Part shown: in pieces, positions 47,432 through 64,000 of the stretch
Numbering within the stretch: the first letter of the stretch is position 1
How the letters are laid out: each line of letters opens with the position of its first letter
Position numbers and translations under genes: made by a program
Assembly: GCA_002269645.1 (NCBI GenBank)
Contig: NIVC01001145.1
Location: 248,001 to 312,000, forward strand
Direction: 5' to 3'
DNA from: Macrostomum lignano
Taxonomy: Eukaryota
DNA length: 64,000 nt
Notes under the pieces: model-generated
Told to the model about the DNA's origin: nothing
What the model saw: the letters and a program-made list of their open reading frames with translations, nothing else
The model's database searches: none

Positions 47432-49707
47432 TCAGTCAAATATGGCTCTACATAGGACTTTTTAATTTCTTATTTTTACCTAATTGTTGCTTATCTTTTC
47501 ACGAAATTATTCTTCAACTTGAAATTCTGTGATTCTACTTATACCGAAAGCCTGGTTATATTCTACTGTTCGATTATTTTGTATTCATACAATACTTTTC
47601 AGCTTAATTTTATTGCAACAATAACTTGCATACCATTTTACTTGAACTTTTTCTAAAACTAATTCGTTGGTAAGCGGAGCGCTACTATTACAATCATACA
47701 ACCGGAGATTCCAATAGTTAATCAGCTAGATGTAAATTTAAAATTAACCAAGATATACGATCGACCCACCTTGTTAATTCGAACTAAAAAAGGTTTCTAA
47801 AATCCATTACAATAGCGGAATTTACGGTGTAGAAGCAGACGACACTTTATGCTTTGATAAAGTTGTAAGGATATTTCCCTATTTCCTCAAAGAACTGTCT
47901 CTAACTGATTTGCTTTGAATTCTTTTTCAATTTTTCCCTGATATATCGGACAAAAAAGCAGACGGGGATTTGTGTTATTCGCTGATTGCCAGAGGTCTAC
48001 CAAATTTGCAGGTGACTTACCCAGATGGGGCAGTAGTAATTATAAATATTAACTTCAAAGTAACTTTCAATTTACGGCACCGATGGTGTCAATAATGGCA
48101 CCAGACACAGGTACATGTACTAAGGAACAATAGTGTTGTTTAGTAGTCCTTGACATAAAAATGCCACGACAGGCAGACATCTACATGTAGCTAATTAATC
48201 GCCGTACGCTAATTCTACTGTTATGCGTCGCCAGGTTCGATGATCCTTCTATTCAGCAGCTCAGGGCGTCTACCTTGCTTTACTCAAGGTTACGAGTTTC
48301 GCTTTCGTGCACGCAAGAGGCTGTTGCTGTACATGTAGCAATAAAAAACAAATATAAACCTTTTCCAAGATTGTCAAGACATGTATGTAGAAGTTACATG
48401 TACCGTTGTATCAGGTCCTTGACCTTTTCCTATAGGTTTGACGCAAGATTTAAGCATTTCTAGCAGGCTAAACCGACTTCGCTAGTGAGCGTCAACAGAC
48501 TTTTACCCGGCCCCGGTTCGCCAGCGTGTTAATTATAGTATAGTCAGCATGGTCAACAAATTTGCAATTTGTAAAATAATTCTAGGTTAGTTTAAAATAT
48601 CGCGTTCACATTTTGCGGTAGTGAACAAACAAATCATGTGACAATATTTGCTGTAGAGAATTTTATTGCTATAAAAATAAACCATTCATGATTTTATTTA
48701 ATTTAAAAATTTTTTTTGCAGTTTTAATCAATAAAGTTAGATTTCACATAATACTTTTGAATTTACAGCTTTCGAATAAAATCAAATCCTAATCTCGAGT
48801 CTCTCGACGCATTGAGGCTTTTCATATTACCAATTCCAGAATCAGAATCGGTTCGGATCTTCCAAGAAAAACAGCAGTATAACTATTTAATTCTGTTGAA
48901 TGTTTGACTGCCTCAACAACCTCACTTAGCACAATTTTTCACTCTCTTTTTTTTGCGATTGTCATTCAATAATAAAAACTTTATAGCACGTATCTCCCTC
49001 TAGTTATGGAGACAAAAAGTTATACTTCACAAATTGGTTCTGGTTCTGGAACCAGAACGAGCAATATCAAAAGGCCCATTGACGACGAAAAATATGTTTC
49101 TATGTCATCATTACTCATCAATCATCAGATTTAGATCACAGGGACAGGTCTACTAAAGGTCGAGGCTACATGAATTCAGAACTGTCTTTTGCTGATGCTA
49201 ATATGTCTAAATTGTTTTGTCTATAATTTGATTTCATACATTTTACTAATCTAAAGTAGACTTCATGAAGTATATTAGGTGAATTCACCTAATATACTTT
49301 TTAGACAATTGTCAAGTTTCATTCATTAAATTATTTTGACTCCAGGAAATTAATCGGTTGACGGTCGTTTCGTCTGCCGCCAGTTCGTCTGCCACCCTTT
49401 CGTCTGCAAGAATACGATACAGTCGTTTCGTCTGCCAACGAATAGTAAAGTTTTAATAAGTGTAAATATGTCAGTTGTTGTCATTAATTTGAGATTTGAG
49501 ATATTTAAGATAACAGTGATTAAGATATCGGATCATTTCTTAGTAGTAATGACTTAAACGAGTAATTTCTGAATATTTTTGTTTATATATATTTAACTAC
49601 GCAATTGAACGAATTCAATGCATTTTCGTCATGAAATGGCAGACGCCATACTATCTCTTAACCGTCTCAAAGCTTCAAAGCTTAAAAGCAATCAGTCGAG
49701 TTGGAAT

Positions 49708-50547
49708 TGTGACGTTGTCAGTTTAAGGTGGTCCCGAAAAGGGCCGTTGGACTGCTGTTCTCCATAGTCATTCAACCCTTCAGTTTCACCGTTTCAACTA
49801 AACTTTTCCATTCGTTTATTGCGACGTTTACTTGTAGTAGTGCCCAACGATTTTGTGGCAATTTATAATTCATTGTATATTTTGCTATCCTCTCTCGCAA
49901 CCGTATAAAATTGGCACGATCGATAATTTTAAGTTCTCTCGCCAGCCAATGAAATCACTCGTGCTCGCGCTACCCCCCTCTGCGCTCTTTTATTAAACCC
50001 CCCGCCTGGCGGCGGGCACTCCTCACCCTTGTTTCCTCCGTCCTTATCTGTGCCTCTCTCTCTCCCTCCCTGTCTGTCCTTGGCCTTGTGTGTGTTTTGC
50101 GTTCCTGCCTGGCTGCCTCGAGCCTCCTTATTTCTCACCACGGCCCCTCTGCCTGGGCCAGCCTGCTCACACACTTACTTGACTGTTTCACGCCACGACC
50201 GACGCCAACTCGCCACTACGTTTCACTGCCTTCACGGTGCTCATAGCCACTGCTCACGTCACGTCGCCATTGTGTCATTCGCCTGCCACTTGACTTCACA
50301 TCCAAATTATATTCAACCCATTGCTGCAGCCGCCAGTGCCCAGAAAGCTATAGCCTGTTTATTGCCAGTAACAACCAAACTTAATACTGATATTAATAAT
50401 AAAGACAACTACGGCAGTTCCTGCCTTTATCGCCAAGTGCTCCGCTACAAAATCCGCTTTACAAGAATTGACTTCAACTTATTTTGGGACTAAAACGGCC
50501 CTTTTAAGGGTCACCGCATAGCTGGCCGCTACGCCAATAACGTGACA
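49708..50547 (+). repeat. 5' LTR
   Basis: tgtgacgttg...ataacgtgaca; AATAAA near 50399. Confidence 0.95.
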
Positions 50548-50553
50548 TAATTT

Positions 50554-50570
50554 TGGAGGTCCCACCGAGA
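50554..50570 (+). other. Primer-binding site complementary to the tRNA-Gln 3' end
   Basis: TGGAGGTCCCACCGAGA is the reverse complement of ...TCTCGGTGGGACCT-CCA (metazoan tRNA-Gln); 6 nt after the LTR. Confidence 0.85.
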
Positions 50571-50830
50571 CTCCTACTCAGCACTGCCGGCTCGCAACTA
50601 AGTCAGCACCACCGAGACTCCTACTCAGCACTGCCGGCTCGCAACTAAGTCAGCACCACCGAGACTCCTACTCAGCACTGCCGGCTCGCAACTAAGTCAG
50701 CACCACCGAGACCAAACTCAGCACTGCCGGCTCGCAACTAAGTCAGCACCACCGAGACTCCTACTCAGCACTGCCGGCTCGCAACTAAGTCAGCACCACC
50801 GAGACGCCTACTCAGCACTGCCAGCTCGTA
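50563..50830 (+). repeat. 47 bp tandem repeat beginning within the PBS
   Basis: caccgagactcctactcagcactgccggctcgcaactaagtcagcac at 50563, 50610 and onward; ~5.5 copies. Confidence 0.93.
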
Positions 50831-53173
50831 ATCAGCGCCATCAAGACTTCGTCTCAGTCCTGCCAGTTTGCAACCAAGGACCAGCCACCAGCGAGACTTC
50901 TGCTCAGCTCTGCCGGCTCGTGACTGAGCACCTGCCTGCCTGTGCTACGCCTGAGGTTCGGTCCGCAAGGCTGCGAGAGCCTGTGCCACGCCTGAGGTTC
51001 GGTCCGCAAGGCTGCAAGAGCCTGTGCCACGTCAGGCCCAGGGGTCCTGACTGCCCGGCTGGTCTTCGCTCGTCGCCGCGAGTCGTCGCTGGTCGTCGCC
51101 CTGAGCAACGCGCGCTGTCAACTGCGTTGAGCTCGAGCTTACGCTCTGCCAAGATAGCTCCGCTGCGTGTGCCAAGCCACGCCAGGTTACGCTGTGCGCT
51201 GATTGTTTGTAGGGACTATTGCCTGACAGTTAGTCTGGGTGGTTTGCGTGATAGGACTTTCCCCTATTATAGGCTTTTTGTGGTTTGCCCCTGTCCGGCA
51301 CGTATTTTTGTTAGTAGGACGCAATCTCTCTCGTCTCTCTCGCGTCATCAACCTCAATTCGTTCTCTCTGGAACCTTACTCTCACTCGTGGTTGCTCCGT
51401 TCGCCTCACTCGGGCTCCTGCCTGAGCTTCATCTCGCACAATGTCCGGCAACGGGGAAGACTTCGGCATGGCGCCTCCCGAGCCTGTGGCGGACCCAGTC
51501 GCCGCACAGGCAGTTAATCCACCAGCCCCAGCCACTGAACCCAGACCCAGCTATGGGCGCCCCATCTGCCCACCCGTTAGGTACCGGGCGTGCCAGGTGT
51601 CCGGCCTGCTCCAGCTGTAGGGTGGCAAGCATTAGTTTGTTCACGCCCTGGGCAAGGCGTTAAACTACCTCCTGTGGCCCCTGTTGGCCACGGGTCCCTG
51701 TGGCCCCGCTGTTCTCCGCCTTCCGCGCCGGTTCTCTCCTTCCTGCCTGTTGGGCGCTTCCGCGCTGGTCCTCTCCCCCTGTCTGTTGGGCGCTTCCGCG
51801 CCGGTTCCCTCCCTTCTGCCTGTTTGGCGCGCTGCGCCGTTCTCCGCCTGGCGCGCTGCGCCGTTTCCTGCCTTGGCGCCCCTGCGCGTCTCTGCCTGGC
51901 GCGCTGCGCCGTTCTCTGCCTTGGCGCGTGGCGCCGTTCCCTGCCGTAGCGCCCTGTCGCCGTTTCCTGCCTTGGCGCGTGGCGCCGTTCTCTGCCTTGG
52001 CGCGTGGCGCCATTCCCTGCCGTGGCGCGCTGCGCCGTTTCCTGCCTTGGCGCGTGGCGCCGTTCCTTTGCCTGGCGCGCTGCGCCGTCTCCTGCCTTGG
52101 CGCGCTGCGCCTTTCTCCGCCTGGCGCGCTGCGCCGTTTCCTGCCTTGGCGCCCCTGCGCGTCTCCGCCTGGCGCGCTGCGCCGTTTTCTGCCTTGGCGC
52201 TCCGCGCCGTCCTGTCTCCGCCTTGGGCGCTCCCTCGCCGGTTTCTCCCTCCCGCCTGTTTGGCGCGCCGCGCCGTGTCCCGCCGCCCTTGGCGCTTGTC
52301 GTCGTTTGCCCGCAGTTGTTCGGGCTGTGCCTCCGTTCTGTGCCTCTGTTCCGTGCCTCTGCTCTGTGTCCTTTTGCCTCATCCGTCTTGTCACCTTTGT
52401 TCTGTGCTCCTTGCCTCATCTGTCTTGTCACCTCTGTTCGTCCTGTCGTTTTTTTTGTGCGTTCGCGTGCCCCGCGCGCTCTGCTCTGCGCTACTTTTGT
52501 AACCAATGTTATTCTCACTGCCATACCTACGTTGACTTTGATTTTCACCATTCATCTACCTGTATTCATTATTTACTGCAGTCTGTTCCTTTGTTTTCGT
52601 ATTCCCCTTCAGTCTCTTCACTTCTTTTTGCGAGCGTGTGAAACATCCCATTTTGTTGCGGTGCCGGACCTCGAAAGCCGGGCGCCATAGGCGTTTTTCA
52701 ACGCTCTTTCTTTTCTCTGTGCCTGTTTTTTTCTTTGCGCCTCTGTGCGCGTGTCTGGGCGGCGCCTGCGTCCCATTGGGGGCGAGCCCATGCGGTCCAC
52801 CGGGACCGGCCCAGCGGTTGAGCCGTTTGTCGGCTGGCTGCACCCTGCAGCGGATGCATTCTGCATCGTTTACACACCTTCACTCCACTGCTTCCCTCGT
52901 GTGCTAGCTCTCCTGTCATTTTCATTGACCCATCTACGTACTACTTATTATCTCACTTTCAGTAATTAACAATTCCTTAATATTAAATTAGTTTGTTTTA
53001 ACTTTACATGCCTTCCTCACTTAAATTCAGTAGTTTTCAACAGACATTTGAATAATGACCCGTCCTACTACAATTTCTGTATGCGTTAAATTCACTCGCT
53101 AAAGTTCAGCTGTGTTTTTCTTGCCGTCACCCCGCGTGTTGGTTTTCTTTTTGCGCGACCCTATCCTTTTTTC

Positions 53174-53187
53174 GGAAGGGAGGCGAG
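53174..53187 (+). other. Polypurine tract
   Basis: ggaagggaggcgag abutting the 3' LTR. Confidence 0.85.
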
Positions 53188-54027
53188 TGTGACGTTGTCA
53201 GTTTAAGGTGGTCCCGAAAAGGGCCGTTGGACTGCTGTTCTCCATAGTCATTCAACCCTTCAGTTTCACCGTTTCAACTAAACTTTTCCATTCGTTTATT
53301 GCGACGTTTACTTGTAGTAGTGCCCAACGATTTTGTGGCAATTTATAATTCATTGTATATTTTGCTATCCTCTCTCGCAACCGTATAAAATTGGCACGAT
53401 CGATAATTTTAAGTTCTCTCGCCAGCCAATGAAATCACTCGTGCTCGCGCTACCCCCCTCTGCGCTCTTTTATTAAACCCCCCGCCTGGCGGCGGGCACT
53501 CCTCACCCTTGTTTCCTCCGTCCTTATCTGTGCCTCTCTCTCTCCCTCCCTGTCTGTCCTTGGCCTTGTGTGTGTTTTGCGTTCCTGCCTGGCTGCCTCG
53601 AGCCTCCTTATTTCTCACCACGGCCCCTCTGCCTGGGCCAGCCTGCTCACACACTTACTTGACTGTTTCACGCCACGACCTACGCCAACTCGCCACTACG
53701 TTTCACTGCCTTCACGGTGCTCATAGCCACTGCTCACGTCACGTCGCCATTGTGTCATTCGCCTGCCACTTGACTTCACATCCAAATTATATTCAACCCA
53801 TTGCTGCAGCCGCCAGTGCCCAGAAAGCTATAGCCTGTTTATTGCCAGTAACAACCAAACTTAATACTGATATTAATAATAAAGACAACTACGGCAGTTC
53901 CTGCCTTTATCGCCAAGTGCTCCGCTACAAAATCCGCTTTACAAGAATTGACTTCAACTTTTTTTGGGACTAAAACGGCCCTTTTAAGGGTCACCGCATA
54001 GCTGGCCGCTACGCCAATAACGTGACA
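53188..54027 (+). repeat. 3' LTR
   Basis: Copy of 49708-50547 at offset 3480; only two differences noticed by eye (50201/53681 and 50481/53961). Confidence 0.95.
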
Positions 54028-54475
54028 GGAATTATTTTACTTATTATAAGTAAGTTACACGCGCACAAATTATAAATCCCATTCATAGCTCACTACGTAG
54101 ATTCAATTAAAGCTTATATACGAATAATTGTATTTCTTGGAAACATTGCGATAAGCAAAATAAAAAATGCAAAGACTACATCTAATTCTAAATCTGAAAA
54201 TTACTAGTAAATTATAAGTATTAAAAATAAACTATAAATTAATTTCAGCCATTTATAAAACTTATTTTGCTACTTATTTTAAAAAGTCGTTTCGTCTGCC
54301 GGCAGACGAAAAGGCGGCAGACGAAATGACCGCGCACCAATTAATCTATGAACCATTTTAAGTAACAATAACTACTTTTAAAAGACTTAAGCCTGAGTAA
54401 GCACTATTTCTATGTTTCAATTAAAACTATTGTATTTGATAGGGCCTACCAACATTAACAAGCTGCAGTAGGCCT

Positions 54476-56877: not shown

Positions 56878-57289
56878 TATTCTATAAAAAACCTAGATAT
56901 TTAGTATTTACCCTTAGCTATATAGGTAGACCCTTAGAGCAATTAACAAAGCTTGCTAAATATGTATGTGGAAAAAGTATGTTTTATAGAGTAGAAAGGG
57001 TGTACTTTGGAAAAGGGAAAAAAGTTTTTAACCAGGCTAGAATAATATGTCTTTCCTTCTCATACATGCCCAACACCTCTCCAACCCATCCAAACTAGAC
57101 AGGTGAAATGGCCACCAGCCAAGGTAAGTTGCAAAATTGAAAATGTGAAAAAGGAAAAATTGGAGGAAGAAAGAAAGGAGAGGAAGAGAAAAGGAAAAGA
57201 AAGAAAGGAGAAAAGAGAGGGGAAAGAGGAGAGAGAAAGAGAAGGAGAAGAAAAGAGAAAAAGGCAAGAAAAGTCATATACAAAGTGAA

Positions 57290-57542
57290 GATTAAGTTGC
57301 AATCAAGGGAACTAAGTCGCAATCAGGGGAACTAAGTTGCAATTGGGAGGAACTAAGTCGCAATCAAGAGGAACTAAGTTGCAATTAGGAGGAACTAAGT
57401 CGCAATCAAGAGGAACTAAGTCGCAATCAAGAGGAACTAAGTTGCAATTAGGAGGAACTAAGTCGCAATCAAGAGGAACTAAGTCGCAATTGGGAGGAAC
57501 TAAGTCGCAATCAAGAGGAACTAAGTTGCAATTGGGAGGAAC
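57290..57542. repeat. 21 bp tandem repeat (gaactaagtcgcaatcaagag)
   Basis: Direct inspection. Confidence 0.93.
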
Positions 57543-58493
57543 TATGTTGCACTAAACAAGTGAAGTTTTGAGGTTGGGCATGTATGTTCCTTCTAGCCAT
57601 TAGACATGCATATCCTACCAAGGGTAAATTAGCCAATAAGGGCTTAGCCTACACTAATAAGAAAGTTAAGTGATACACTTTTATCCAAACAATGTATGGA
57701 ATACCTAAGGGACAAAGGGCTCATTATATAAAGCCATTGTAAGATAAGATCATTCTTAGCTCCTATCTCTACAGTGTAAAAGTTCCAATGTACAATCAAA
57801 CTTATGCTACAACAGCTTTATAGTACGAACCCAAATTGCATGTTAAATTAAATACTATAAAATATATCTATGTTGTGTAGGGCTTGAATCTATTACTTGT
57901 ATTTCTTTTTTGACATTAATAATTATCAATCTTAATATAAATCACTATCTAAATTATTGAGTCATATAATATATTTTAGATTTATATAGATAAAGTTATA
58001 ATTCTTTAAATTAGTTTATCTTACATTTCCTTGGTTTAAACCTAGCATGAAATCTTTGTTATAAATGAGAGTTTTTAACAAAATTGCAACAATTTTTGTG
58101 TATTTTCTGAACTTGAATGAATTTGACAATCTTAAATTGAATTAGTTATATTGTTGTCTCTTAGTGCATCATAAATGTAGCACTTTTTTCTGTGCATCAC
58201 AATGTCCTACAATGTTTTTGTGAATGCAAATATCATTGCATTCCGTAATGGTAGAGATTGAACAAATATTCAGAATTGAATTGAATCAACCAAATATTCA
58301 GTTCAAATTGGAATCAGAAAGCTGACTAATCTAAATATCAAATAGTTGCTTTGATGTGAAGCAAAGATTTGGAGCAAGTCAAGAGTTGAGTATTGGTGTT
58401 GTGGCTCATAAATGAAGGGAAGGAATTAGGGATAAATATGAATAGATTAACTATCACTTCGGCAACAACTAACCTCTCCAATATAATTTTCAG

Positions 58494-59027
58494 GGTGTAG
58501 CCCTCGCCAAGCTTAGGCGCCTGTTTGGCAGCCGTCAATGCAAACTGCTTCTAGTAGGACTAGACAATGCTGGCAAAACCACTGTACTCTACCAGCTAGT
58601 GCTGGGCGAAACTGTCCATACTGCTCCAACTATAGGATCCAATGTTGAAGAGTTGCAATGGCGTGGACTGAAATTTTTATTGTGGGATCTTGGCGGACAG
58701 AGTTCAGTGCGGTCTACCTGGGAGTCATATTACTCTGGCACAGATTTTGTCATACTGGTTGTTGATTCCTCAGACCGGAAGCGTCTTGAACTGATTAAAT
58801 CCGAGCTGTACAGTATGCTGTCATCCGATCAGCTGCGCAAGGCATCCCTATTGGTTCTAGCTAATAAGCAGGATGTTGCTGACAGGTTAACTGCAGCCGA
58901 GATTAGTCGAGCACTAGACCTCACCTGTCTGCGCTGCAGGCCTTGGCATATTCAAGCTTGCTGCGCCTTGAGCGGAGAAGGTCTCACAGCGGCTATGGAA
59001 TGGTTGGTTTGTCAGGCAAAGGTTTAA
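58494..59027 (+). CDS. ARL5: ADP-ribosylation factor-like GTPase 5; residues 2 to end in one exon, Met1 not adjacent in the genome
   Basis: GVALAKLRRLFG...GLDNAGKTT...PTIGSNVEE...WDLGGQ...ANKQD...WHIQACCALSGEGL; PTIGSNVEE and HIQACCAL are ARL5-type; acceptor ataattttcag at 58493; AATAAA at 59039 and 59047. Confidence 0.93.
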   Translation, partial: GVALAKLRRLFGSRQCKLLLVGLDNAGKTTVLYQLVLGETVHTAPTIGSNVEELQWRGLKFLLWDLGGQSSVRSTWESYYSGTDFVILVVDSSDRKRLELIKSELYSMLSSDQLRKASLLVLANKQDVADRLTAAEISRALDLTCLRCRPWHIQACCALSGEGLTAAMEWLVCQAKV

Positions 59028-59109
59028 CAAAAAAAAACAATAAAGAAATAAATTTTCCTTGTTAAAGGATTGTGTAAAATTTCGTACTTTGAGAAACAGG
59101 AATCTGGAT

Positions 59110-59765
59110 TTTGAAATCCCAGGATCCCGATCCTCAAATCCTAAAATTCCGACCCTGAAATCCTAAATACCGATCCCGAAATCCTAAATACCGATCCTGA
59201 AATCCTAAATACCGATCCCGAAATCCTAAATACCGATCCCGAAATCCTAAATACCGATCCTGAAATCCTAAATACCGATCCCGAAATCCTAAATACCGAT
59301 CCCGAAATCCTAAATACCGATCCCGAAATCCTAAATACCGATCCTGAAATCCTAAGATCCCGATCCTTAAATCCCCGGATCCCGATCCTGAAATCCTAAA
59401 TACCGATCCTGAAATCCTAAGATCCCGATCCTTAAATCCCCGGATCCCGATCCTGAAATCCCCGGATCCCAATCCTAAAAATCCTAAGACCCCGATCCTG
59501 AAATCCTAAGATCCCAATCCTGAAATCCTAAGATCCCGATCCTGAAATCCCGGGATCCCAATCCTGAAATCCCCGGATCCCAATCCTGAAATCCCCGGAT
59601 CCCGATCCTGAAATCCCGCGATCCCAATCCTGAAATCCTGGGATCCCGATCCTGAAATCCCGCGATCCCAATCCTGAAATCCTGGGATCCCAGGATTCCT
59701 GTGTCTAAAGTCCGCGATCCTGAAATCCAAAGATCCCAATCCTGAAATCCCGGGGGATCCTGAAA
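59110..59765. repeat. 21 bp tandem repeat (ccgatcctgaaatcctaaata) and variants
   Basis: Direct inspection. Confidence 0.93.
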
Positions 59766-60363: not shown

Positions 60364-60689
60364 AAGCGTTTATAATTTTGCGACCATGACATTTTTTATT
60401 TAGCCTTCCCCAAATGCATTCTATGCTATCTTTGAACTTATTTTTGTCCGTTTTATTTTATCATTTATTTAGCGCCCCTAAGGTTAACACACAGGCCAAA
60501 GATGCTTCTATTTTTTATGACGTAATATATCGGTTATTATTTTACTAAACTATAAAATGCAATTGAAGCTTGCAAATGCCAATTAGTAAATGTAATTATA
60601 AGAATGCGCCGATTTTGGTGGCAGTTTGTCTTAATATCGTCTTAGATTGGTCTTCTTTATTTATTGAAACATTACTTAACTCGTTGCAG

Positions 60690-61479
60690 CTAGAGTGACC
60701 CCTTTCTAGATAGAGCGACCACATTCGAGATGGAGTGACCCCATTGCAGCTGAATTGACTCCTTTCTAGATAGAATGACTCGATTGCGGCTGGAGTGAAC
60801 CCCATTGCAGCTAGAGTGACCCCATTGCAGCTAGAGTGACCCCATTGCAGCTAGAGTGACCCCATTGCAGCTAGAGTGACCCCATTGCAGCTAGAGTGAC
60901 CCCATTGCAGCTAGAGTGACCCCATTGCAGCTAGAGTGACCCCATTGCAGCTAGAGTGAACCCCATTGCAGCTAGAGTGACCCCATTGAAGCTAGAGTGA
61001 ACATTGCAGCTAGAATGACCCCATTGCAGCTAGAGTGACCCCATTGCAGCTAGAGTGACCCCATTGAAGCTAGAGTGAACCCCATTGCAGCTAGAGTGAC
61101 CCCATTGAAGCTAGAGTGAACATTGCAGCTAGAATGACCCCATTGCAGCTAGAGTGACCCCATTGCAGCTAGAGTGAACCCCATTGTAGCTAGAGTGACC
61201 CCATTGAAGCTAGAGTGAACCCCATTGCAGCTAGAGTGACCCCATTGAAGCTAGAGTGAACCCCATTGCAGCTAGAGTGACCCCATTGCAGCTAGAGTGA
61301 CCCCATTGCAGCTAGTGACCCCATTGCAGCTAGAGTGACCCCATTGCAGCTAGAGTGACCCCATTGCAGCTAGAGTGACCCCATTGCAGCTAGTGACCCC
61401 ATTGCAGCTAGAGTGACCCCATTGCAGCTAGAGTGACCCCATTGCAGATAGAGTGACCCCATTCTAAATAGAGTGACCC
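60690..61479. repeat. 20 bp satellite (ccccattgcagctagagtga), left part
   Basis: Direct inspection. Confidence 0.96.
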
Positions 61480-62588: not shown

Positions 62589-63665
62589 TCTAGATAGAGT
62601 GACTGTTGCAGCTGAAGTGACCCCATTGCAGCTGAAGTGACCCCATTGCAGCTGAAGTGACCCCATTGCAGCAGAGTGACTATTGCAGCTGATGTGACCC
62701 CATTGCAGCAGAGTGACTGTTGCAGCTGAAGTGACCCCATTGCAGCTGAGTGACTATTGCAGCTGATGTGACCCCATTGCAGCAGAGTGACTGTTGCAGC
62801 TGAAGTGACCCCATTGCAGCTGAAGTGACCCCATTGCAGCAGAGTGACTATTGCAGCTGATGTGACCCCATTGCAGCAGAGTGACTATTGCAGCTGATGT
62901 GACCCCATTGCAGCAGAGTGACTGTTGCAGCTGAAGTGACCCCATTGCAGCAGAGTGACTATTGCAGCTGATGTGACCCCATTGCAGCAGAGTGACTGTT
63001 GCAGCTGAAGTGACCCCATTGCAGCAGAGTGACTATTGCAGCTGATGTGACCCCATTGCAGCAGAGTGACTGTTGCAGCTGAAGTGACCCCATTGCAGCT
63101 GAAGTGACCCCATTGCAGCAGAGTGACTATTGCAGCTGATGTGACCCCATTGCAGCAGAGTGACTATTGCAGCTGATGTGACCCCATTGCAGCAGAGTGA
63201 CTGTTGCAGCTGAAGTGACCCCATTGCAGCAGAGTGACTATTGCAGCTGATGTGACCCCATTGCAGCAGAGTGACTGTTGCAGCTGAAGTGACCCCATTG
63301 CAGCAGAGTGACTGTTGCAGCTGAAGTGACCCCATTGCAGCAGAGTGACTATTGCAGCTGATGTGACCCCATTGCAGCAGAGTGACCCCATTCTAGATAG
63401 TGACCTAATTGCAGCTGGAATGACCCCATTGCAGCTAGAGTGAACCCCATTCTAGATAGAGTGACCTAATTGCAGCTGGAATGACCCCATTGCAGCTAGA
63501 GTGAACCCCATTCTAGATAGAGTGACCCCATGTCCCCATTACAGCATATGTGAACCCATTACAGCATATGTGAACCCATTACAGCTAGAGTGACCCCATT
63601 ACAGCTAGAGTGAGCGCCATTCTAGATAGAGTGACCCTATTGCGGCTGGAGTGACCCCATTGTAA
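62589..63665. repeat. Same satellite family, right part, with diverged 20-42 bp units
   Basis: gtgaccccattgcagc core shared with 60690-61479. Confidence 0.95.
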
Positions 63666-64000
63666 ATAGAACCCAATCATGAATGCTATAAATGCAATGA
63701 AAACAGTCTGCCCATCTGCATTTCCAGTTCGCCTGCAGAACAGAACCCTGAGATTACGTAACCCTCACTTCAGTCCCAGGCATGAAGCGAGCCAACCCAC
63801 AGTTCGCAACTCCTTCTCTGGGTTCATCCGAGGTCAGCACTGACCCCTGCCTGCTAGATCGAAAGCGTCTGAGGCCCACCGCTGCGGCCTCTGCAGCTCC
63901 AAACAGATTGAAGTCTATGACTAAACAGTTGAGCAGTAGTAGTCTCGTAATTCGCAAGGATGCTGCACTGCAGCGGAAGCAGCTGCATCCTATGCAGCAA

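What the first reader, a model, noticed from the sequence alone, without database searches (positions are those of the whole stretch)
58470..59052. ARL5 begins at Gly2 exactly at a splice acceptor with no genomic Met: candidate for translation initiation from the spliced-leader AUG
Seen in the sequence: an in-frame stop at 58470-58472, no ATG after it, the acceptor ...ataattttcag, then GGT GTA GCC (G-V-A-L-A-K-L) aligning to ARF-family residue 2 onward, with the rest of the CDS in one exon. Established: ARF/ARL proteins need Met1-Gly2 for N-myristoylation, and flatworm SL exons end in AUG that can act as initiator. Inference: trans-splicing supplies Met1, making ARL5 synthesis and lipidation depend on SL addition at this exact AG. 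Together with 10981 (and possibly 43181 and 39092), SL-donated starts may be frequent here. The alternative is a cis exon ending ATG|gt, e.g. ATG|gtagag at 58248-58256.
Basis: partly seen in the sequence, partly recalled or inferred. Interest (0 to 1): 0.8.

Follow-up and report, generated by a model that had tools for sequence, protein, structure and literature searches.

The report
ARL5 gene started by spliced leader
This flatworm (Macrostomum lignano) ARL5 GTPase gene has no start codon of its own and almost certainly borrows the AUG at the end of the trans-spliced leader RNA, a mechanism described in flatworms since 2006, so it is a clean example, not a new kind of thing.

Summary
There is an in-frame TAA at 58470-72 and no ATG after it. 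The acceptor ...ataattttcAG ends at 58493. GGT at 58494 opens one uninterrupted 177-codon ORF ending at TAA 59025-27. ORF residue 1 aligns to Gly2 of ARL5 proteins.

The window is Macrostomum lignano scaffold NIVC01001145.1. GenBank already annotates this CDS as a 5'-partial protein starting at exactly 58494.

Four lines support trans-splicing as the source of Met1:
- The published M. lignano spliced leader ends in ...TTGCATG.
- The annotation pipeline sets mRNA 5' ends from SL-containing reads.
- Two homeologous copies and an old paralogue (71% aa) all have AG|GGN, an in-frame stop 2-8 codons upstream and no ATG.
- The first internal in-frame ATG is codon 109, past the P-loop.

Tapeworm and fluke ARL5 orthologues keep a genomic ATG next to Gly2.

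I could not see SL-joined reads, so the junction is inferred. The cis-exon rival (ATG|gtagag, 58248-56) has a poor donor and is absent from all five gene models. It does sit in an oddly invariant 148-nt block.

SL-AUG initiation is established in flatworms (Cheng et al. 2006), so interest is modest.

The parts
58176..58324 (+). Invariant 148-149-nt upstream block. Possibly a promoter or outron element.
   Evidence: There is no difference between the window, L001 and L004 here, while the rest of the shared upstream region is about 6.4% diverged between window and L004. It is single-copy, has no Rfam match and has no counterpart upstream of the paralogue. Its function is inferred only.
58468..58472 (+). 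CTAAC, a branch-point-like motif 22 nt upstream of the acceptor. Its TAA (58470-72) is the in-frame stop that closes the reading frame upstream.
   Evidence: Read directly from the sequence. The branch-point role is inferred from the consensus, not tested.
58473..58493 (+). Pyrimidine/AT-rich tract and 3' splice acceptor ...ataattttcAG (AG at 58492-58493). Proposed SL trans-splice acceptor.
   Evidence: TTTCAG fits the [T/C]TNCAG motif enriched at M. lignano trans-splice acceptors (PMC8629364). The GenBank CDS, and therefore the transcript model, begins at the next base.
58494..59027 (+). Single-exon ARL5 coding sequence from Gly2 to Val178 plus TAA. It lacks codon 1.
   Evidence: Translation. 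Pfam Arf 1.2e-62. Best database hits are ARL5A/B/C at 53-61% identity. Best solved structures are human ARL5B and ARL5A at E~1e-66, against 6e-55 for ARF1. There are only 4 differences in 534 nt against L004, compared with 6.4% in the flank.
59039..59052 (+). Two overlapping-range AATAAA poly(A) signals (59039-44 and 59047-52), 12-25 nt after the stop codon. This implies a very short 3' UTR.
   Evidence: Read from the sequence. Use as the poly(A) signal is inferred.

Best explanation
This is one of three near-identical copies of a Macrostomum lignano ARL5 gene whose genomic DNA encodes residues 2-178 only.

Proposed mechanism:
1. The pre-mRNA is transcribed from a promoter somewhere in the roughly 0.9 kb upstream that the copies share (inferred).
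2. The 5' outron is removed, and the 35-nt spliced leader (...UUGCAUG) is trans-spliced onto the acceptor AG at 58492-93 (inferred from the public transcript model and the sequence).
3. The SL's 3'-terminal AUG then sits directly in frame before GGU. It is the only AUG that can open the ARL5 reading frame (shown from sequence).
4. Translation gives MGVALAKL.... Methionine aminopeptidase and N-myristoyltransferase can then expose and acylate Gly2, as in other ARL5 proteins (inferred from family knowledge).

Un-trans-spliced transcripts cannot make ARL5.

The arrangement predates the duplication that produced the two M. lignano ARL5 paralogues. It is probably derived, because the tapeworm and fluke orthologues examined keep a genomic ATG.
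For: - The sequence facts are.
- Organism and record: NIVC01001145.1:248001-312000, GCA_002269645.1.
- The SL ends in ATG (PMC8629364; PMC10468722).
- The GenBank CDS starts at 58494 as 5'-partial. The same is true in L001 and in both copies of the paralogue, and in L004 it starts 3 nt later. With an in-frame stop 2-8 codons upstream, a 5'-partial ORF requires the transcript to begin at the acceptor.
- TBONE sets such 5' ends from SL-containing reads (PMC5730564).
- The paralogue (71% aa, 67% nt) has cttgcAG|GGG CTG..., a TAA 8 codons upstream, no ATG and no other upstream similarity.
- Internal in-frame ATGs occur only at codons 109 and 169.
- The CDS is under constraint: 0.75% against 6.4% divergence.
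- Gly2, a small residue at position 6 and a basic residue at position 7 are conserved.
- Virtually all Arl5 proteins have Gly2, and most are predicted to be myristoylated (PMC8358228).
- SL AUG as an in-vivo initiator in flatworms is reported by Cheng et al. 2006, as cited in PMC12582326, PMC9851317, PMC5832876, PMC3510090 and PMC7653826.
Against: - No SL-joined read or cDNA for this gene could be inspected.
- No transcript-derived protein starting MGVALAK is in the 15-billion-protein collection.
- The supplements I could search did not list the gene.
- The '5'-partial' flag alone is not proof. A neighbouring CSRNP-like model (L004:8508) is also 5'-partial after an acceptor, yet there the SL AUG would be out of frame, and its homeologue has a genomic ATG.
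- An ATG|GT at 58248-52 lies in a block that is unusually invariant between homeologues.
- N-myristoylation of this protein is untested.
Confidence: 0.85

Rival explanations
1. A cis-spliced 5' exon ending in ATG supplies Met1. The candidate is ...ccgtaATG|gtagag at 58248-58256, with a 243-nt intron to the same acceptor. This could act alone or as an alternative to SL addition at a shared acceptor.
For: - ATG|GT is present 246 nt upstream in all three homeologous copies.
- It lies inside the 148-nt block that shows no substitutions between copies.
- Sharing of acceptors between cis- and trans-splicing is reported for parasitic flatworms (PMC12582326).
Against: - GTAGAG does not fit the M. lignano donor consensus GT[G/A]AG (PMC8629364).
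- One ATGGT per kb is expected by chance.
- Three further ATGs (58202, 58212, 58224) lie just upstream and would act as upstream AUGs unless transcription starts within about 20 nt of the candidate.
- The paralogue has no ATG|GT closer than 2.3 kb, and none with a consensus donor.
- None of the five RNA-seq-guided gene models contains such an exon. All are 5'-partial at the acceptor.
Confidence: 0.08
2. The locus is a start-less pseudogene or non-translated copy, and the missing ATG is simply a defect.
For: There is no genomic start codon. The CDS is intronless while orthologues have introns, as in retrocopies. The genome is highly duplicated (PMC5730564).
Against: - The ORF is intact in all three copies, with 4/534 differences against about 6.4% in flanking DNA.
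- An old paralogue keeps the same start-less structure and all G-motifs.
- There is no SL remnant and no flanking poly(A) tract of the kind expected in a retrocopy of a trans-spliced mRNA.
- These are the only ARL5-like M. lignano proteins among the top database hits.
Confidence: 0.03
3. Translation starts at a non-AUG codon in the genomic sequence upstream of Gly, or an assembly error hides the ATG.
For: None specific. The paralogue has near-cognate codons (ATC, ACG, TTG) between its stop and the Gly codon.
Against: - In this gene the seven codons between the TAA and GGT include no near-cognate start.
- Any such start would bury Gly2 and abolish N-myristoylation.
- Three independently assembled scaffolds agree on the acceptor AG, the in-frame stop and the absence of an ATG, although L004 differs at a few bases just upstream of the junction.
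Confidence: 0.02

Closest known systems
Flatworm mRNAs that use the spliced leader's 3'-terminal AUG as initiator methionine (Cheng, Cohen, Ndegwa & Davis 2006, J Biol Chem 281:733; Schistosoma and Echinococcus examples)
   Same: The SL exon ends in AUG. The acceptor is placed so that this AUG is in frame with, and required for, the conserved N-terminus of the protein. There is no usable genomic AUG. [quoted passage not shown]
   Different: Here it is in the free-living basal flatworm M. lignano, where I found no gene-level description. The second codon is the myristoylation-acceptor Gly, so lipidation also depends on the SL. The state is shared by two paralogues. Use of the SL AUG is inferred here, not shown experimentally.
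ARL5 (ARL5A/ARL5B/ARL5C) subfamily of ARF-family GTPases, trans-Golgi/endosome-to-Golgi traffic
   Same: 53-61% identity over the full length to metazoan ARL5. The best PDB matches are human ARL5B (1yzg) and ARL5A (1z6y, 1zj6). The GLDNAGKT, DxGGQ and NKQD motifs and Gly2 are conserved.
   Different: Codon 1 is missing from the genomic coding sequence. The CDS is intronless, unlike the Taenia and Dicrocoelium orthologues. Function in M. lignano is untested.
slORFs: ORFs created by start codons within spliced leaders in nematodes, ascidians and euglenozoans (slORFfinder, PMC9851317)
   Same: A start codon donated by the SL defines the ORF on the mature mRNA, and it is invisible in genome annotation.
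   Different: Those are mostly non-canonical NUG starts and new or alternative ORFs. Here a canonical AUG completes an ancient, conserved protein.

Membership tests
SL-AUG-initiated flatworm mRNA | The organism has an SL RNA whose exon ends in AUG followed by a GU donor | tested here: met
   Published M. lignano SL CGGTCTCTTACTGCGAAGACTCAATTTATTGCATG with a GTAAG donor (PMC8629364). PMC10468722 concurs. This comes from the literature. No SL gene lies in this window.
SL-AUG-initiated flatworm mRNA | [quoted passage not shown] | tested here: met
   AG at 58492-93 is followed directly by GGT, codon 2 of ARL5. The acceptor fits [T/C]TNCAG.
SL-AUG-initiated flatworm mRNA | No genomic AUG can yield the conserved N-terminus | tested here: met
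   TAA lies 8 codons upstream, there is no ATG or near-cognate codon between, and the first internal ATG is codon 109.
SL-AUG-initiated flatworm mRNA | Mature mRNA carries the SL joined at that acceptor (SL reads, cDNA or 5' RACE) | not testable with these tools
   Indirect only. The GenBank 5'-partial CDS begins at 58494 in a pipeline that sets 5' ends from SL reads. No transcript-derived protein is in the collection.
SL-AUG-initiated flatworm mRNA | The protein is actually initiated at the SL AUG | not testable with these tools
   Needs N-terminal proteomics, ribosome profiling or a reporter.
ARL5 subfamily (ARF family GTPases) | Arf-family GTPase domain with intact nucleotide-binding motifs | tested here: met
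   Pfam PF00025 at 1.2e-62, covering model positions 5-171 of 174. GLDNAGKT, WDLGGQ and NKQD are invariant in the alignment.
ARL5 subfamily (ARF family GTPases) | Closer to ARL5 than to ARF1, ARL1 or other paralogues | tested here: met
   The named top hits are ARL5A/B/C. PDB: ARL5B and ARL5A at about 1e-66, ARF1 at 6e-55, ARL1 at 2e-51. No phylogeny was built.
ARL5 subfamily (ARF family GTPases) | Gly2 with an N-myristoylation-compatible N-terminus | tested here: inconclusive
   Gly aligns to Gly2, with Ala6 and Lys7 (paralogue Ala6 and Arg7). Virtually all Arl5 proteins have Gly2 (PMC8358228). I judged NMT motif compatibility by eye and ran no predictor. Lipidation is untested.

The most novel reading that the evidence does not exclude
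Loss of the genomic start codon makes trans-splicing an obligatory, and possibly regulated, gate for ARL5 synthesis and lipidation in Macrostomum. The invariant 148-nt upstream block may be part of a switch between a productive outcome (SL, or a cis exon ending in ATG) and an unproductive one at the shared acceptor. If Gly2-after-acceptor turned out to be systematic for N-myristoylated proteins in this species, it would point to selection for SL-donated starts rather than neutral drift.
Probability: 0.1. Interest if true: 0.55.

Novelty: new member of a known kind. Interest (0 to 1): 0.3.

Why it matters
The case is a clear, easily tested example of a conserved protein that cannot be made from its gene without trans-splicing, in a flatworm where transgenesis is available.

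It has practical consequences for annotation. GenBank lists this ARL5 and its paralogue as '5'-partial' proteins lacking Met1, although they are most likely complete. Orthology or completeness pipelines may therefore mis-score them.

It also shows that N-terminal lipidation can depend on an RNA-processing step.

It does not change what is known about the mechanism, which has been established in flatworms since 2006.

Tried and rejected
1. I looked for transcript-derived proteins (Logan or other RNA assemblies) starting MGVALAK. The exact sequence is not in the collection, and the 90% cluster holds only three NCBI genome-derived members.
2. I searched the supplements of PMC5730564, PMC5816591 and PMC5173321 for Mlig003408, Mlig024902, Mlig002685 and ARL5, and found nothing. 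PMC8629364 has no held supplements.
3. Cheng et al. 2006 and Wasik et al. 2015 are not held, so the former is cited through papers that cite it.
4. I searched the window for an SL gene or SL remnant using the 16-mer of the SL 3' end with up to 2 mismatches, and found none. The ORF is therefore not a retrocopy that retains the SL.
5. I searched for shared upstream motifs between the paralogues and found only chance-level short matches.
6. An Rfam scan of 57000-59200 gave no match.
7. I considered using the '5'-partial' flag as proof of SL-AUG use and rejected it as insufficient on its own because of the L004:8508 counter-example.
8. I ran no further search on a census of other M. lignano ARF-family starts, because the top-120 output would be swamped by near-identical ARFs from other species.
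9. I found no paper in the held library linking SL-AUG use with myristoylation.

Full report
**Observation**

- An in-frame TAA lies at 58470-58472.
- The next 21 nt (cctctccaatataattttcag) hold no ATG in any frame and no near-cognate start codon in frame.
- The AG at 58492-58493 is followed by GGT GTA GCC CTC GCC AAG CTT.
- A single ORF of 177 codons runs to TAA at 59025-59027.
- Two AATAAA signals follow within 25 nt of the stop.

**Identity of the protein**

- Pfam Arf matches at 1.2e-62.
- The best database matches are ARL5A/B/C from many animals at 53-61% identity over the full length.
- The best solved structures are human ARL5B (1yzg) and ARL5A (1z6y, 1zj6) at E~1e-66, against 6e-55 for ARF1.
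- In a multiple alignment, and in the PDB matches, ORF residue 1 corresponds without gaps to Gly2.

**Where the window comes from**

The exact 177-aa product is in the public collection. It is encoded on Macrostomum lignano scaffold NIVC01001145.1 (assembly GCA_002269645.1, Mlig_3_7), and the window is bases 248001-312000 of that scaffold.

GenBank annotates the CDS from exactly 58494 as a 5'-partial protein.

Two near-identical copies exist on other scaffolds:
- L001: PAA92468, Mlig003408g1.
- L004: PAA62734, Mlig024902g1, whose CDS is annotated from Val3.

A paralogue at 71% amino-acid identity exists in two copies (L002 and L003, Mlig002685g2).

**Is trans-splicing able to supply Met1?**

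The published M. lignano spliced leader is CGGTCTCTTACTGCGAAGACTCAATTTATTGCATG, followed by a GTAAG donor. The motif enriched at its acceptors is [T/C]TNCAG (PMC8629364). Both TTTCAG here and TTGCAG in the paralogue fit that motif. PMC10468722 explicitly calls the terminal ATG a translation start codon. Joining the SL at 58493|58494 gives ...UUGCAUG GGU GUA..., that is M-G-V-A-L-A-K.

That a flatworm SL AUG can serve as initiator in vivo is attributed to Cheng et al. 2006 by five papers I read. [quoted passage not shown] For 4 of the 8 such cDNAs tabulated in detail, that ATG is required to match the conserved N-terminus.

**Evidence that it is used here**

I could not see reads, so this part is indirect.

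1. The Mlig_3_7 annotation is RNA-seq-guided. Its TBONE step cuts transcripts at peaks of SL-containing reads, and ORFs were then called with TransDecoder (PMC5730564). An in-frame stop lies 2-8 codons upstream in every copy. A 5'-partial ORF starting at the Gly codon can therefore only be called if the transcript model begins at the acceptor. That is the case in four models, and within 3 nt in the fifth. No model has an upstream cis exon.
2. The paralogue shares nothing with this gene upstream of the CDS. Yet it has cttgcAG|GGG CTG ATA..., a TAA 8 codons upstream and no ATG. The acceptor-before-Gly2 structure has therefore been kept since an old duplication (67% nt identity in the CDS).
3. 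The gene is constrained. There are 4 differences in 534 coding nt between the window and L004, against about 57 in 895 nt upstream. The ORF is intact everywhere.
4. The first internal in-frame ATG is codon 109, beyond the P-loop and switch regions. No genomic AUG can give a working GTPase.

**Comparison with other flatworms**

In Taenia crassiceps and Dicrocoelium dendriticum, ARL5 has a genomic ATG contiguous with the Gly codon (cttcATGGGC and gaccATGGGT), and the genes contain introns. The start-less, intronless state in M. lignano is therefore probably derived.

**N-myristoylation**

Virtually all Arl5 proteins have Gly2, and most are predicted to be N-myristoylated (PMC8358228). Here Gly2, Ala6 and Lys7 (paralogue Ala6 and Arg7) look compatible with the usual N-myristoyltransferase preferences. 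That judgement rests on my own knowledge of the motif, not on a predictor. The logic that lipidation depends on the SL-donated Met follows from this, but lipidation was not tested.

**Rivals**

Cis exon. It lies in a 148-nt stretch (58176-58324) with no difference among the copies, which is unexpected given 6.4% divergence around it. My estimate is about 0.004 for a gap that long among 57 intervals.

Several points weigh against the cis exon:
- GTAGAG departs from the GT[G/A]AG donor consensus.
- Three ATGs lie within 50 nt upstream.
- One ATGGT per kb is expected by chance.
- The paralogue has none within 2.3 kb.
- No gene model uses it.

I read the block as a likely promoter or outron element and keep the cis exon at about 8%.

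Other rivals. A pseudogene is contradicted by the constraint on the CDS and by conservation in the paralogue. A retrocopy of a trans-spliced mRNA would be expected to carry SL sequence, and none is present. Non-AUG initiation is unlikely here because there is no near-cognate codon and any such start would bury Gly2. Assembly error is unlikely because three independently assembled scaffolds agree on the acceptor, the in-frame stop and the absence of an ATG.

**A caution**

The '5'-partial' flag alone does not prove SL-AUG use. The CSRNP-like model at L004:8508 is also 5'-partial just after an acceptor, but there the SL AUG would be out of frame. Its homeologue, starting at window 63782, has a genomic ATG. 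In the ARL5 case the decisive point is the alignment of the first codon to Gly2.

**Verdict**

The mechanism is already known for flatworms, the SL of this species is known to end in ATG, and the CDS boundary is already in GenBank. This is therefore a new, tidy member of a known kind. The small added points are that N-terminal lipidation is coupled to trans-splicing, that two paralogues share the state, and that parasitic-flatworm orthologues do not.

Noticed in passing
window 58176-58324: A 148-nt block is identical in all three homeologous copies, although the surrounding non-coding DNA differs by about 6.4% between window and L004. It is single-copy, has no Rfam match, and is not shared with the paralogue. 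It contains a 28-nt imperfect tandem duplication (58263-58316). It may be a promoter or outron element of ARL5.
   Followed up: partly
window 49356-54338: About 5 kb is absent from the homeologous scaffold (L001). It has an internal 100% direct repeat (49708-50007 = 53188-53487) and twin 154-aa ORFs (50029-50493 and 53509-53973) flanking GC-rich tandem-repeat DNA. It looks like a recent LTR-like insertion or a segmental duplication.
   Followed up: partly
L002/L003 5001-5534, L006, L007: Both M. lignano ARL5 paralogues have intronless coding sequences. The Taenia crassiceps orthologue spans 3.3 kb and the Dicrocoelium orthologue spans 26 kb, both with introns and a genomic ATG next to Gly2.
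   Followed up: partly
L004 8508 and window 63782: The CSRNP_N-domain gene downstream of ARL5 is annotated 5'-partial in L004, starting 2 nt after the acceptor catttccag, where the SL AUG would be out of frame. The window's copy starts at a genomic ATG at 63782. This shows that '5'-partial' models in this annotation are not all SL-AUG cases.
   Followed up: partly
window 59112-59750, 60684-61479, 62596-63661: Long tandem arrays lie immediately downstream of ARL5, with periods of 22, 20 and 37/20 nt. The first begins about 60 nt after the poly(A) signals. They are shared with the homeologous loci, with different copy numbers.
   Followed up: no
By eye, the frame that reads most like coding sequence (…SKKCSNCDLLEKQSQRLQQTIRAC) is not the frame set by an SL AUG joined there. 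It may be an ordinary cis acceptor or lie in a 5' UTR. I did not check it further.
   Followed up: no
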